Of a stretch of DNA of 64,000 nucleotides, positions 58,488 through 64,000 are shown piece by piece (within the stretch, counting starts at the first letter, position 1; each line of letters starts with the position of its first letter). The notes under the pieces were generated by a model, which was not told the DNA's origin, did no database searches, and saw nothing but the letters and a program-made list of their open reading frames with translations. A program made the translations under genes and the position numbers. Source of the DNA: Hyphochytrium catenoides (Eukaryota > Protista > Hyphochytriomycota); the NCBI GenBank assembly GCA_900088475.1, contig FLMG01004102.1:1-64000 (forward strand), read 5' to 3'.

Positions 58488-61400
58488 TCAATTTCCTGTC
58501 CACCGGTCTAGGGTGGTATTCTACCAGTAGAGGTGATGAGTAATGATAGCTAAAGCTGAACTTCTCGCAATGTGCTGGCACGTACAGTCTGTGCAGGCAC
58601 ATTGAACTGCTGCAGACTCGTAGAGAACTCCTCTGGCTCCTCTACGTTGTGATATAGGCATATTTCCCTGGCAGTACGGACGCGAACATTCAAAAGAAAA
58701 AACAGAGAAATAAAGGAATAAGGGCGACGGTTGAAGCAGGAATTGGTAAAAGCCGAAAAAGGGTACCTATATAGTAACTGCCTGAGCACTTTAGAGGACA
58801 GTGCGCGGTAGTCAAAATTGGTCTTCTCGTCCAGGGGCGACCTTGTAGTTTCTCGCTCTGGATCACGCCATTTGGCAAAGTAAGGGTGCTGATAGGGAAG
58901 GAAATACAATATGTCAATGAAACTAGTGGAAAGAGGCAGTAACAAAGAAGCACAGAAGAGACACTCTGGACAGTGCTTACGGGCCTAAGGCCATCAATTC
59001 CTTATTACTCAATAAAGGAAGAAGATGGCATTTTGATGGCGAGAGATGCAATGGGGAATTTCTAGGGAGAGGGACAGGGCCCTTGTCTTGTTTTGACATA
59101 TACGGAGTGAAAGATGAGCCATAAGGAGTTATAGTGGCGTACCGACAATGCCTCTGCAGCAGTGAGCCTCTGAGATGGGTCGAACACCAGCAGCTTCTCC
59201 AGGAGGTCAAGAGCCAAGGGGTTGGCAGTCGGAAAGCGCTTCTCAAACTTCACCTTAGGGTACCGATGAAAGTTCAAAAACTCACGGGCCGCAAAGCGCC
59301 GCGCCTGCATACTAGTGTTATCATGGTCACTGTACTGTAGAGGAATGATAATACTTCCACGATGGGAGGAAAGCAACCTAGCGAACGGTGCCGAAAGGCG
59401 CTATAAGTTAAAGAAAGAAAAGACCGAGAGCGTACGAGGCAGAGTCCAGCTTCGCTTCAACTTGCTAGCTGAAACCGCACGCAGCAAACATGTTAAGCAG
59501 CTCTCACCTTGGGATTTGTGACGAAGTCATACGACTGCGGCGACCCTATAACTTCAAGGATGCGTCGGAGCTGATCGACGTAACTTTTTCCAGGGAAGAA
59601 GACCTGACATAAGACGCGACACAGCAAAAGAAGGGTCGAGAAAGATCTAAGTCTTCTACTGGCCTATCACAACGAGCACTGAGACAGTGGAAGGTTTATA
59701 ACAAAGAGATATACTGGAAAGAGAAGCGCTATATGTAGTGAATATGCGGCAAGTCGATTTGGCAATGACATTGACCACGGACGGTCATAAAGGAAGCACC
59801 ACTTCATCTATCATACCGCTCTGCCCAGCATCTCAGCCAGAATGCAACCAACTGACCACATGTCAATAGCAGAGGTGTACATGTTTGCCAGCAAGAGCTC
59901 AGGCGCACGATACCAGCGGGTCACCACGTACTCTGACAGACCCTCGTTTACGTCATCCAAAGACCTGAACGAGAAGGGGCACCACGCGTCAGGTGAGGTT
60001 TGCTGAACGGCTAGAGTCATGGTCACAAACAAAGATATATGTCACGCTCCGACGAGTAAGAATTTGAGAGTTTGGAGAGCTTACCTCGCTAGTCCTAGAT
60101 CGCAAATGCCAATTTCACAGTCCGAGTTCGCAAGGATATTGCTAGGTTTTAGGTCTTTAAGAAGTCATATAAAGAGAGCGCTTAGCGTCTTGCTCTAAGT
60201 CCAGCAAATGAGGAGTTTATGGCAGTGCCTGAAGGAGGAGCAAATAGCAAAGGAGAAAGCCAAGCGGAGTTTCACGTCACTCACCTCTGTGCACCACTCC
60301 TGCAGAATGCATGTAATTTACAGCGCAAATAATTTGATAGATAAAGAATTGGATGTGATCATCCGTCAAAAGCGTCTTCGAATGTATGATCCTTGGAACC
60401 TTGTGTTAGCTCAGTCCTCATTGTGGGTCCAGAAACTTCCTATCTCTATTCTGCTTGGTATCTAGCTCTTTATCTACACGTGTCTCTTCCTCGTATTGAG
60501 GCCAGATAGTCTGAAGGGAATGTTATACTTCCCTTTGCCACCTTTGTTCTTCACTATCTCTCCCTAACCGTGCAACTCCCATTGTTTTCAATGTGAACAC
60601 TCTAAAATTTGCTAACTAATGGTGGCTTTTAGGCAGTTAGCAAGGGCACTCACCTACACAGGTCCGTCTCCATCAGTGGCGTCACAATGTAAAGGTCCTC
60701 AAACGTATCCAGACTTCGAGGCATCTCCAGCTCTACCACTCCCATGACGTTTGGATGGTCACCAAGCATCCTCATCAGCTTTATCTCCCTCAACGTCTGA
60801 GAAGTATTAGAAAAATGAGTGCTTGTGGTACACAAGGAAGAAGGGAATATCTAACGAGCTTTTCCCCTCTCTTATTTGTTGGAGACCGCTTGGAATGGAT
60901 AGGAAGGCTACAGAGCAAAGGCCTCAAACCAAACCCAACGTGTAGGTCACAGGGTCTGAAAGGAGGAAACTTACAAGCGTCGCCAGCTTCTTGTGGCGCA
61001 GAAAGTTTCCTATCTTCTTGATAGCAAACGTTCCCCCACTGATGACATCACTGGCAGCGATGACCACGCCATAGGAACCTGCGATACAGACACAAAGAAT
61101 TAGTTATCCCGACATGAATTAGTTGTACAGGCTAACTGATGTCAGCTTTTACCCCAGATTCAGAAAATGGAAAGATGCCCTGCCTGCTACGCAGACCTAC
61201 GTACTGCCTCTTATCGCCCTCGTTCGTAAGCGGACCCCGACGCCATCCCTCACCTTTCCCGATCGTCTTCACATAGTGGTACTTCCGATGAATTGAAAAA
61301 CGGGTGTCCTCGACCATGAAGGTGTAGCTGTCCCAAGGGTTATTGATATCAGGCAGAATACCTGGTATGGGCAGGTGAAGTGACCAAACCAAGAGGTTAT

Positions 61401-61830
61401 AAGAAAGATAAGCATAAGGAATCCAGGAGCTAGCAGCGAGACATCGGGACCTGAGTGCAGCTCTTTTAGATACTAAATATACCTTCTGATTGGGCAATCT
61501 CGTCACGTTCTTCATGAGGAGCCAGTCCTGAGTGTTCGAAGACCTTAACCGAGTCGAGCATCGTAGCAAGCTCCCTATCCTCCTCTTCAATGGGGCCTCT
61601 CATGCGGTGATTGGTTGGGTGTCGTTTTTTGCTTTGGCCCCTAAATGAGGAAATTTTATTCAGGCTGCCAATGCGCATGCGAGGGCGTTTCGGTGTATCC
61701 GACGTCTGTTGGATAACCTGATGTCCCAAGGGGTGAGTTATTTCGTGCAACAAAGCATTGGTATGGACAAACATGACAGTAGAACAAGGTCTCAGTAAGG
61801 TTGCACCAATCAAAGCAAAAGGTTAACTCT
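58488..61830 (-). CDS. Mitogen-activated protein kinase domain (atypical SEY activation loop, DLG motif); the gene extends upstream
   Basis: [99 protein letters not shown]. The stop is at 58488 if the last intron is spliced, otherwise 58550. Confidence 0.93.
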
Positions 61831-61884
61831 TAGATAGCACGCTGACAGACTTCTTTAGAATAGAATGATCTTTAAGCTTGACTT

Positions 61885-62997
61885 ACCTCAACATCCAAAT
61901 CCGCAACGACGCTGCCTCTGAAGGCGTCGACGGAGTTACTAAGGTTGAACACCTGAAGCAGGACGATACTTTATTAGAAGACACTCCAGGAGGCAAGGAT
62001 TCGCGGAGCCATTCACAAGACGACCAGTCCGGAGATTGACGCANNNNNNNNNNNNNNNNNNNNNNNNNNNNNNNNNNNNNNNNNNNNNNNNNNNNNNNNN
62101 NNNNNNNNNNNNNNNNNNNNNNNNNNNNNNNNNNNNNNNNNNGGGCTTCACTTATGCTGGCCGCCAGGTTTACGGAAGAGGTCCCAACGAGGTCCCCGCC
62201 GGAACCATCAGGGAACATCGCCCACAACCTGAGAATCTTCGAAGCGGTATCAGATAACATGAACTCCGTCTACAGTCTATCCATCTGCCCACATATTGTA
62301 GCTACTTATCCATCAAACTACACGAGAGTTTGCCGTTTGGGCCATCGAGAGATTATAACTTGTTCCCATGCGCTTACCAGTTCAGTGCTATCGCCTTGAT
62401 GGACTTCCGGAAACCGAAGGGATAGACTCTCACCGAAGGGCACCGAACACAGCGGGACCACAGGAGATGACTGACTGCGTTGTGTAACTTTCTGAAGGAA
62501 ATCAAGCTGTTAGCATGAGGAACAAAAGTCGTCGGGCATAAACCTAGGTAAGGAGGCATTGGGTAGGAGGATCATGCCCGATATCTCAACCATATATTCA
62601 AAAAAGTGGTCATGAGAGAGTGACGGCAATAAGCGGCGCTAGAAGCTGTCTTGGAGAGGGGATAGACTAGAGATTTCACAAAGGCAGGTTTGCAGAGCCA
62701 GAACCTCGTTGTCCTTCAGCTCAGGGCCGCACAATTCCTCCACCGGTACAGGAGAATGGTCCATGGACTGCGTCGTTCTCAGCTCGCCCCGACTATCAAA
62801 GGTGGCCTGGACGACACTACTCACAATTAAGGTATGTACTAGCGCGATCATGCGAAAGTATATGGTAAGAATATTGACAGGCGAAGACAGTCCTACGTAG
62901 GTGAACAACATAGAGGAACGAAAGAGCAACTTACTAGTGTCGGTCTGGCCAAAAAACAACTTGCTCTGCTTTGTGAACCGTCATGTTTATTTTTGCG
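61885..62997 (-). CDS. C2-like domain exons, probably the N-terminal extension of the MAPK
   Basis: SAKINMTVHKAE (62997-62935), YVVQATFDSRGELRTTQ, VPFGESLSLRF, ILRLWAMFPDGSGGDLVGTSSVNL and, after the gap, FRGSVVADLDVE. Confidence 0.55.
62044..62142. other. Assembly gap (N run)
   Basis: N run inside the C2-like region. Confidence 0.99.
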
Positions 62998-63063
62998 CTG
63001 GTCGAACAATGTTATTAAGATCCCGTCCTTGATGGACGCACTCGACGCAGACGAAAAGCCTAC

Positions 63064-64000
63064 CTCCTTATAAATGATTGAGTTATTGAGCCCTGGCTGA
63101 ACGGAAGCTTGAGGTTGATAGGAACAGTCTTGCCCGAGAATGCGACAGAAGACGCCACGACATCTCCGAACACTTCAAATCTAGTTACCCGACCTTCATC
63201 TCTGTCAGCCAGTTGAGAGGCATACCAGATAAGTGCAAACAGGGAGAAGGTCAGTGGGACGTTGAGGACCTAAGATATGCTTGTTCATCCCAGAGAACGT
63301 AGCACGGAAGGAAGGGATAAAGCAGAGAGCGAGCACAACAAATTATATTCCTTTCTTGCTGCGGAACAGCCTTTAGTCTCACTTGAATCGCAATTTATGG
63401 ATCCACTTCTGGGTAAACTGGCGGCCGCGGGATCTAACCTAGTGATAGAAGTCGGCGGTCAGGTCAGCCTCATGACAAGAATTGCAGATTGCGAAGGACG
63501 CTAGGTAAGGAAAGGAAGGCATCCGCAACAAGCAAGAAAAGGACGACGGTTATAGCTTACCTCAAAGGTTTCTGTGCCAGAGACGACAGCAATTTTGCCG
63601 TCCAGAGTCATTCCATCCACATGGAAAGAGAGTAGCCTAATGTGCCATAGTGAGATTTAAGGTTGCAGACGAAAGAGGTAACGTAAAGAGGTCGTAGGAA
63701 ACAACAGAGAGCCAACCGTTTGCACGTCATTTTAGGGTAACAAGAGAGACGGAGTCACCTAATTGTGTTCGTAACTCTGGATAGAAACTCTACAAAACCG
63801 GTGTGTCCCTTGTAGTTACCGCTGAAGGGTACCGACGGCAGATAGTTGGAGGTCAGGAATATCTCCTACAGGAAGGATAGGGTGGGAGAGATGTGTTGAG
63901 GTGTCCATGTGCAAAGGTGCAAAGAGTTATATGAGTTACTTCTAAGGGCGGAAAGGGCTATTCGTCTTACCGGATGCAGAACACTGAGGATGGAGCTGAG
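63064..64000 (-). CDS. SnoaL/ketosteroid-isomerase-like (NTF2-fold) domain, five exons; 5' end outside the window
   Basis: Exons 64000-63971, 63865-63759, 63636-63561, 63438-63383 and 63201-63064 join with GT-AG in compatible phase: LSSILSVLHP-EIFLTSNYLPSVPFSGNYKGHTGFVEFLSRVTNTIR-LLSFHVDGMTLDGKIAVVSGTETFE-VRSRGRQFTQKWIHKLRFK-DEGRVTRFEVFGDVV. Confidence 0.8.

What the first reader, a model, noticed from the sequence alone, without database searches (positions are those of the whole stretch)
58488..64000. Putative SnoaL/NTF2-C2-MAPK fusion: a candidate ligand-sensing, one-component MAP kinase
Seen: five short minus-strand exons at 63064-64000, none in the ORF track, splice into a typical SnoaL/KSI-like NTF2-fold sequence (VPFSGNYKGHTGFVEF...GKIAVVSGTETFEVRSRGRQFTQKWIHKLRFKDEGRVTRFEVFGD). 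A phase-compatible path continues through a 66-nt intron (63063-62998) and a 118-nt intron (62934-62817) into C2-like strands, crosses the N gap, and enters the linker and kinase domain. I found no convincing separate start for the kinase. Known: NTF2/SnoaL folds form hydrophobic small-molecule pockets, C2 domains bind membranes, and most MAPKs have no sensory domains. Inference: this could be a membrane-recruited MAPK controlled directly by a lipid or small-molecule ligand. Caveats: if the 63063 donor is not used, a TAG at 63062-63060 ends a standalone SnoaL protein; two donors in the C2 region are weak (GTTCTG, GTTGAG); a gap interrupts the path; and I cannot check whether this architecture is already in databases.
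Basis: partly seen in the sequence, partly recalled or inferred. Interest (0 to 1): 0.8.

Follow-up and report, generated by a model that had tools for sequence, protein, structure and literature searches.

The report
MAP kinase with built-in NTF2 and C2 domains
This stramenopile gene most likely encodes one long signalling kinase (a MAP kinase) that carries an NTF2/SnoaL-like domain and a C2 domain in front of the kinase; oomycete databases already hold the same layout, but nobody seems to have described the two extra domains.

Summary
The five minus-strand exons at 63064-64000 splice into a sequence that scores 134 bits (E 1.7e-43) against the matching region of a family of long oomycete MAP kinases. 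C2-like exons, a linker and ten kinase exons follow in the same order as in those proteins.

The fusion exists in relatives. At least 37 oomycete proteins of about 1000-1100 aa have this layout. A metagenomic relative (P0198, 939 aa) encodes PH + NTF2-like + C2 + kinase in one uninterrupted ORF.

Predicted structures of the orthologous regions match NTF2/SnoaL/KSI folds (Z 11.2) and C2 folds (Z 12.2, SHIP2). Pfam names neither domain.

Still inferred in this window:
- the 66-nt intron (63063-62998), because no RNA run was listed;
- continuity across the N gap, which cuts the C2 domain.

The gene starts beyond 64000, and relatives have a PH domain there.

The architecture is therefore supported but not new; it is a new member of a known family annotated only as PH + kinase. 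"Ligand-sensing one-component MAPK" remains untested. The NTF2 domain could equally serve assembly, as in CaMKII.

The scan noted this before: once on this same stretch in another window (s1-352550), and once as a likely paralogue elsewhere in this genome (s1-371223).

The parts
63971..64000 (-). Exon S1 (partial, runs off the window): end of the first helix of the NTF2-like domain
   Evidence: Reads LSSILSVLHP in phase 0 and aligns with the family's first-helix segment (rlfsllkpD in the A1 HMM); donor GTAAGA
63759..63865 (-). Exon S2, NTF2-like domain (SNYLPxVPFxGxY motif)
   Evidence: tblastn with P0024 E 1.5e-7, 47% identity
63561..63636 (-). Exon S3, NTF2-like domain
   Evidence: tblastn HSPs with P0184 and P0024; donor GTAAGC
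63383..63438 (-). Exon S4, NTF2-like domain (conserved Q-x-W-x-H strand)
   Evidence: tblastn 53% identity to P0024; invariant Q and H kept
63064..63201 (-). Exon S5: last NTF2 strands plus the conserved tail FGDVVASSV...LP...SF
   Evidence: tblastn E 5.7e-7, 50% identity to P0024 up to the last codons before the donor
62998..63063 (-). Proposed 66-nt intron (AG|GTAGGC ... CTTAAT ... CAG|C). If it is retained, TAG 63062-63060 ends the protein
   Evidence: Only in-frame link that keeps all conserved residues. Shorter than the other 18 measurable introns of the model, 97-259 nt. No RNA evidence
62935..62997 (-). Bridge exon B: first strand of the C2 domain; contains in-frame ATG 62985-62983
   Evidence: Aligns without a gap to the family segment between NTF2 and C2, but adds no significant score on its own; strong donor GTAAGT
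62705..62816 (-). Exon C1, C2 domain strands 2-3 and a variable loop (may end at 62750 with donor GTACCG)
   Evidence: DRH-Y-VVQATFDS aligns to family DRFFVRCSLDT; donor variants scored
62378..62491 (-). Exon C2, C2 domain (FGESLSLRFPEV...)
   Evidence: Second-best of 74 six-frame segments against the family C2 HMM, at HMM 37-73
62143..62236 (-). Exon C3, C2 domain (LWAMFPDG...VNLAASISEA); runs into the gap; an alternative acceptor gives a start at 62269
   Evidence: HMM 84-101; the 62236 variant scores 15.2 against 8.4 bits
62044..62142 (.). Assembly gap inside the C2 domain; hides about 15 family positions and a donor site
61887..61952 (-). Exon C4, last C2 strands (VFNLSNSVDAFRGSVV)
   Evidence: Best six-frame segment against the family C2 HMM, at HMM 115-137
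61483..61717 (-). Linker exon: basic and Ser-rich, probably disordered
   Evidence: Open frame, phase-compatible. The equivalent region is low-complexity in relatives and its start is modelled at low confidence in the P0184 C2 model
58550..61361 (-). Ten kinase exons K1-K10 (61361-61254, 61078-60975, 60796-60654, 60391-60285, 60154-60085, 59964-59817, 59603-59508, 59304-59143, 58888-58767, 58667-58550): MAPK domain with an S-E-Y activation loop and DLG in place of DFG
   Evidence: Pfam Pkinase on single exons in consecutive profile positions; 58-60% identity over about 345 aa to P0198, P0184, P0024 and P0157; tblastn collinear

Best explanation
The locus is one intron-rich gene. It is the counterpart of the oomycete long MAP kinase family with the layout PH, NTF2-like, C2, linker, MAPK (S-E-Y loop). 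In this window the NTF2-like exons are joined to the C2 exons by a 66-nt intron.

How it probably works (inferred from the known families):
- The PH domain (upstream, not seen here) and the C2 domain place the kinase on membranes. The C2 is closest to the SHIP/PI3K C2 domains and probably does not depend on calcium.
- The kinase is still switched on by an upstream MAP2K at Ser/Tyr of the S-E-Y loop.
- The NTF2-like domain is a regulatory module. One of its strands shows a conserved, mostly aromatic face (F-Q-W-H-L-F). The next strand carries conserved charged residues (R, E, D).
- My leaning is about 45% that the NTF2-like domain mediates assembly or docking, within or between molecules. It is about 35% that its pocket binds a small hydrophobic ligand. 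The remainder goes to other roles.
For: Architecture in relatives:
- A search with kinase exon K8 found long MAPKs.
- The spliced model aligns collinearly with P0024 from the NTF2 part through the junction, C2, linker and kinase.
- The NTF2+C2 region of P0024 finds 37 oomycete proteins, nearly all annotated as MAPK or protein kinases and mostly about 850-1100 aa.
- P0198 carries all the domains in one uninterrupted 2820-nt ORF.

This window:
- NTF2 part scores 134 bits, E 1.7e-43, and keeps 22 of 27 invariant residues.
- C2 part scores 15-16.5 bits, against a maximum of 2.7 for 200 shuffles.
- Kinase is 58-60% identical to relatives, with Pkinase hits on single exons.
- Only the 63063->62998 junction keeps the conserved residues.

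Folds of the orthologous regions:
- NTF2-like: Foldseek E 1e-6, probability 1.00; Z 11.2, rmsd 3.0-3.1 Å, 113-116 residues aligned.
- C2: Z 12.2, rmsd 2.3 Å, 112 residues aligned to SHIP2.
Against: - No transcript evidence: no RNA run was listed.
- The 66-nt intron is shorter than the other 18 measurable introns of the model (97-259 nt).
- A stop lies directly after the donor, and an in-frame ATG lies 75 nt further on.
- The bridge exon gives no significant homology by itself.
- The N gap cuts the C2 domain, so continuity there is assumed.
- Structures were predicted for orthologues, not for the window's own protein.
- The functional statements are inference only.
Confidence: 0.85

Rival explanations
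1. Gene fission in this lineage gives two genes. A PH/NTF2-like protein ends at TAG 63062-63060, and a separate C2-MAPK starts at ATG 62985.
For: A stop codon lies immediately after exon S5. There is an in-frame ATG in the bridge exon, and an AATAAA sits at about 62992-62987. The proposed intron is unusually short. No RNA data are available.
Against: Only 75 nt separate the stop from the ATG, while the next gene downstream is roughly 0.9 kb away. The ATG would clip the first C2 strand. The open frame extends upstream of the ATG exactly to a usable acceptor. All relatives are fused, one as a single ORF.
Confidence: 0.08
2. The scaffold gap joins two different loci, for example two paralogues. 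In that case the NTF2/C2 front and the kinase back are not one gene.
For: The gap at 62044-62142 has only an estimated length. Another note of this scan reports a second gene of the same layout in this genome.
Against: The two flanks match consecutive parts of one C2 domain, on the same strand and in the right order, with about 15 positions missing. The S-E-Y kinase and the NTF2 part are both closest to the same S-E-Y relatives.
Confidence: 0.04
3. One reading: the NTF2-like pocket binds a lipid or small molecule and gates the kinase directly, making a one-component sensor MAPK.
For: The fold family consists mostly of small-molecule binders and enzymes such as KSI, SnoaL, LEH and LinA. On one strand, the alternating positions F-Q-W-H-L-F are conserved while the intervening positions vary (inference from the alternation pattern). 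A sensor domain on a MAPK has a precedent in the PAS-MAPK PITG_01203 (PMC3019232).
Against: No ligand, pocket volume or catalytic set was tested. NTF2-like domains in multidomain signalling proteins often serve assembly instead (CaMKII hub, G3BP, NTF2; established knowledge). The S-E-Y loop implies ordinary MAP2K control.
Confidence: 0.3

Closest known systems
Oomycete long CMGC/MAPK proteins with an S-E-Y loop (e.g. Pythium oligandrum Poli38472_001024 = P0024; Saprolegnia diclina P0184; metagenomic P0198)
   Same: Same domain order, same S-E-Y loop and the same NTF2 signature residues. Identity is 58-60% in the kinase and 42-46% in the NTF2 part.
   Different: The window's gene is intron-rich (at least 21 exons), whereas P0198 is a single ORF. 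It has DLG instead of DFG and a much more diverged C2 region. It is about equally distant from all oomycete members, so it looks like an outgroup.
Phytophthora T-E-Y paralogues of the same layout (P0124, P0101; 1011-1333 aa)
   Same: PH (in P0124; P0101 begins at the NTF2-like part), NTF2-like, C2 and MAPK in the same order; DLG motif as in the window.
   Different: T-E-Y loop and long inserts. Only 43% identical in the kinase and 26% in the NTF2 part.
PsSAK1 of Phytophthora sojae
   Same: [quoted passage not shown] From my memory of Li et al. 2010, this was because of a PH domain, and silencing affects zoospores and infection.
   Different: I could not read the original paper or its sequence. 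Whether PsSAK1 is the S-E-Y or the T-E-Y type is not established here.
PAS-MAPK PITG_01203 of Phytophthora infestans
   Same: A stramenopile MAPK with an N-terminal sensor-type domain (PMC3019232).
   Different: It has a PAS/PAC domain, not NTF2/C2, and a T-E-H loop.
CaMKII association (hub) domain
   Same: An NTF2-fold domain fused to a Ser/Thr kinase (established knowledge).
   Different: The hub is C-terminal, drives 12-14-mer assembly and belongs to the CAMK group. It was not among the top 50 structural matches.
SHIP1/SHIP2 and PI3K C2 domains
   Same: Best structural matches of the family's C2 region: Z 12.2 for SHIP2, 9.7-10.2 for PI3K.
   Different: 7-12% sequence identity to the SHIP C2 domains and a different partner enzyme.

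Membership tests
Oomycete-type PH-NTF2-C2-MAPK family (S-E-Y) | MAPK catalytic domain with S-E-Y activation loop | tested here: met
   [15 protein letters not shown] in exon K6; 58-60% identity to family kinases; Pkinase on exons
Oomycete-type PH-NTF2-C2-MAPK family (S-E-Y) | NTF2-like region with the family signature residues | tested here: met
   134 bits, E 1.7e-43 against the family HMM; 22 of 27 invariant residues kept
Oomycete-type PH-NTF2-C2-MAPK family (S-E-Y) | C2-like region between the NTF2 part and the kinase | tested here: met
   15-16.5 bits against a shuffle maximum of 2.7. Weak, and interrupted by the gap
Oomycete-type PH-NTF2-C2-MAPK family (S-E-Y) | All domains on one polypeptide | tested here: inconclusive
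   A phase-compatible splice path exists and its junction is the only conserved one, but there is no RNA and an N gap lies in the path
Oomycete-type PH-NTF2-C2-MAPK family (S-E-Y) | N-terminal PH domain | not testable with these tools
The gene runs beyond 64000.
Pfam SnoaL / SnoaL_2-type families (sequence level) | A hit to a Pfam NTF2-clan profile | tested here: not met
   No such hit in P0024, P0124, P0101 or P0012, which carry the region, at E <= 1, nor in the single window exons
NTF2-like superfamily (fold level) | Alpha+beta cone fold | tested here: met
   Tested on orthologue P0184:302-477: Foldseek E 1e-6 with all top 50 matches NTF2-like; Z 11.2. The window's own protein was not folded
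SnoaL/KSI/LEH enzymes | Known catalytic residue sets | not tested
   No residue-level structural superposition was available
C2 domain | Eight-stranded C2 sandwich | tested here: met
   Tested on orthologue P0184:466-640: Z 12.2, rmsd 2.3 Å, 112 residues aligned to SHIP2 C2, and all top 50 matches are C2 domains. Pfam C2 is only subthreshold, and only in the T-E-Y paralogues
C2 domain | Calcium-binding aspartates in the loops | not tested
   The family consensus shows no SDPY or DxD motifs by eye. No formal test was made

The most novel reading that the evidence does not exclude
The conserved NTF2-like pocket binds a hydrophobic small molecule, for example a sterol or lipid mediator. This binding directly gates, or relocates, a MAP kinase across oomycetes and their relatives, giving a ligand-sensing MAPK that bypasses receptor input.
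Probability: 0.15. Interest if true: 0.8.

Novelty: new member of a known kind. Interest (0 to 1): 0.45.

Why it matters
The finding extends a conserved, poorly described MAPK subfamily beyond the annotated oomycetes. It also assigns folds to about 300 residues that databases leave blank: an NTF2/SnoaL-like domain and a C2 domain between the PH domain and the kinase. One family with a PH domain (PsSAK1) is reported to be needed for zoospore function and infection in a crop pathogen. Knowing that these kinases carry a possible pocket domain gives a concrete hypothesis for how they are regulated, and it can be tested on recombinant domains.

Tried and rejected
- **RNA evidence:** The look-up of sequencing runs listed no run, so read laying could not be used.
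- **Single-exon searches of the NTF2 and C2 parts:** the Pfam scan and the PDB sequence searches of two NTF2 exons gave nothing, because the pieces are too short.
- **tblastn for the C2 exons:** oomycete proteins did not find them. Only a family HMM on the spliced model did.
- **Bridge exon alone:** it adds no score, so the exact junction rests on collinearity and on excluding the five other in-frame links.
- Those steps were left out. Exons were joined only inside local scripts, to compare them with proteins already fetched. Folds were predicted for orthologous regions given by reference.
- **Post-gap peptide:** It has no homology and cannot be joined in phase.
- **Literature:** no paper in the library links an NTF2-like domain to a MAPK in oomycetes. 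The PsSAK1 paper itself is not held.
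Full report
**The sequence.** The region is an intron-rich eukaryotic gene on the minus strand. The first exon is cut by the window edge.
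- Exon S5 ends at AG|GTAGGC (63063).
- If that donor is not used, TAG 63062-63060 terminates the frame.
- The next coding exon (62997-62935) has a frame closed upstream by TAA 63014-63012.
- That exon therefore has a single usable acceptor (62999-62998) and an in-frame ATG at 62985.

After it come four C2-like exons, the N gap (62044-62142), a linker exon and ten kinase exons that end at the stop 58552-58550. The model has no internal stop.

**RNA.** No RNA run was listed for this DNA. Splice junctions could therefore not be checked directly.

**Relatives.** Single exons were too short for Pfam. A search of the representative library with kinase exon K8 found several long MAPKs. My spliced model aligns collinearly with P0024 (Pythium oligandrum, 1061 aa). 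The alignment runs from the NTF2-like part through the conserved tail FGDVVASSV...LP...SF, without a gap across the S5|B junction, into the C2 region, the linker and the kinase.
- The NTF2+C2 region of P0024 finds 37 oomycete proteins, from Pythium, Phytophthora, Plasmopara, Bremia, Hyaloperonospora, Aphanomyces, Saprolegnia, Achlya, Thraustotheca and Lagenidium.
- They are mostly 850-1100 aa. Most are named CMGC/MAPK and carry only PH and Pkinase as Pfam domains.
- A metagenomic relative, P0198 (939 aa), is encoded by one uninterrupted 2820-nt ORF holding PH, NTF2-like, C2 and an S-E-Y kinase. The fusion is therefore real at the DNA level in a relative and is not a gene-model artefact.
- T-E-Y paralogues with the same domain order exist in Phytophthora; P0124 also carries the PH domain.

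**How well the window fits.**
- tblastn with P0024 and P0184 hits exons S2-S5 and K1-K9 in order.
- The spliced NTF2 part scores 134 bits (E 1.7e-43) against the family HMM.
- It keeps 22 of 27 invariant residues. Three of the five changes are conservative.
- The spliced C2 part scores 15-16.5 bits, against a maximum of 2.7 for 200 shuffles.
- The two best of 74 six-frame segments are proposed C2 exons, in the right HMM order.
- The kinase is 58-60% identical to P0198, Saprolegnia, Pythium and Phytophthora alike, and 43% to the T-E-Y paralogue. This suggests an outgroup position.
- Kinase exons hit consecutive parts of Pfam Pkinase.

**The junction.** Six in-frame GT-AG links are possible between S5 and B. 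Only 63063->62998 keeps the conserved tail, and it has the best donor.

The resulting intron is 66 nt. The other 18 measurable introns of the model are 97-259 nt. The bridge exon alone gives no significant score.

The junction is therefore the best inference, not a demonstration. The alternative of two genes would leave 75 nt between stop and start.

**The gap.** Exon C3 runs into the N run. The post-gap 91 nt have no homology and end in a good acceptor before exon C4. About 15 family positions are missing. Frame and continuity cannot be read, but both flanks belong to consecutive parts of one C2 domain.

**Folds.** The joined model has no reference, so I predicted orthologous regions given by reference.
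- P0184:302-477 (pLDDT 66.8 overall, 75-90 over most of the core) matches only NTF2-like proteins. Foldseek gives E 1e-6 and probability 1.00. VIA-align gives Z 11.2, rmsd 3.0-3.1 Å over 113-116 residues, with all top 50 matches of SnoaL, KSI, LinA, LEH or NTF2 type.
- P0184:466-640 (pLDDT 75) matches C2 domains. VIA-align gives Z 12.2, rmsd 2.3 Å over 112 residues to SHIP2, and all top 50 matches are C2 domains. Foldseek is weaker, E 3e-3.
- Pfam has no NTF2-clan hit, and only subthreshold C2 hits in the T-E-Y paralogues.

**Function (inference).**
- The kinase has the usual catalytic motifs, an S-E-Y loop and DLG for DFG. It is probably active and switched on by a MAP2K.
- PH and C2 domains are membrane-targeting modules in their known families.
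- On the NTF2 strand FTQKWIHKLRF, alternate positions (F, Q, W, H, L, F) are conserved while the others vary. This points to a conserved inner face.
- The next strand carries conserved R, E and D.
- This pattern fits either a ligand pocket or a docking surface. NTF2 folds in signalling proteins such as CaMKII often assemble oligomers (established knowledge).
- A sensor domain on a stramenopile MAPK is already described (PAS-MAPK, PMC3019232), and PH domains on CMGC kinases are listed in the same paper.
[quoted passage not shown] My recollection that this is because of a PH domain could not be checked.
- No paper in the library describes an NTF2-like domain in these kinases.

**Verdict.** The architecture is supported and conserved, but it is already present in databases. 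The ligand-sensing mechanism is untested.

Other notes of this scan agree: one on this same stretch (s1-352550), one on a likely paralogue elsewhere in this genome (s1-371223), and one on the S-E-Y/DLG motifs (s1-352589).

Noticed in passing
window 57097-57673, minus strand: The next gene downstream has ORF pieces with a repeated motif, PPGGKSSITFG and KPGGSSQLSYLFGG. From memory, this resembles SPIRAL1-like microtubule-associated proteins.
   Followed up: no
window 62987-62992, minus strand: An AATAAA hexamer sits inside the bridge exon, about 70 nt after the TAG that would end a stand-alone NTF2 protein. It is probably chance, but it is relevant if intron retention produces a short isoform.
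   Followed up: no
window 60085-60154 and 59817-59964, minus strand: The kinase has DLG instead of DFG together with S-E-Y. The S-E-Y relatives keep DFG, while the T-E-Y paralogues share DLG.
   Followed up: partly
window 28624-28723: A second assembly gap of 100 N lies in the window.
   Followed up: no
L001 3001-5820: The metagenomic relative P0198 lies on a gene-dense contig without introns in this gene. Its neighbours include a cytochrome b5 reductase-type gene and an ANAPC10 gene. The organism was not identified.
   Followed up: no
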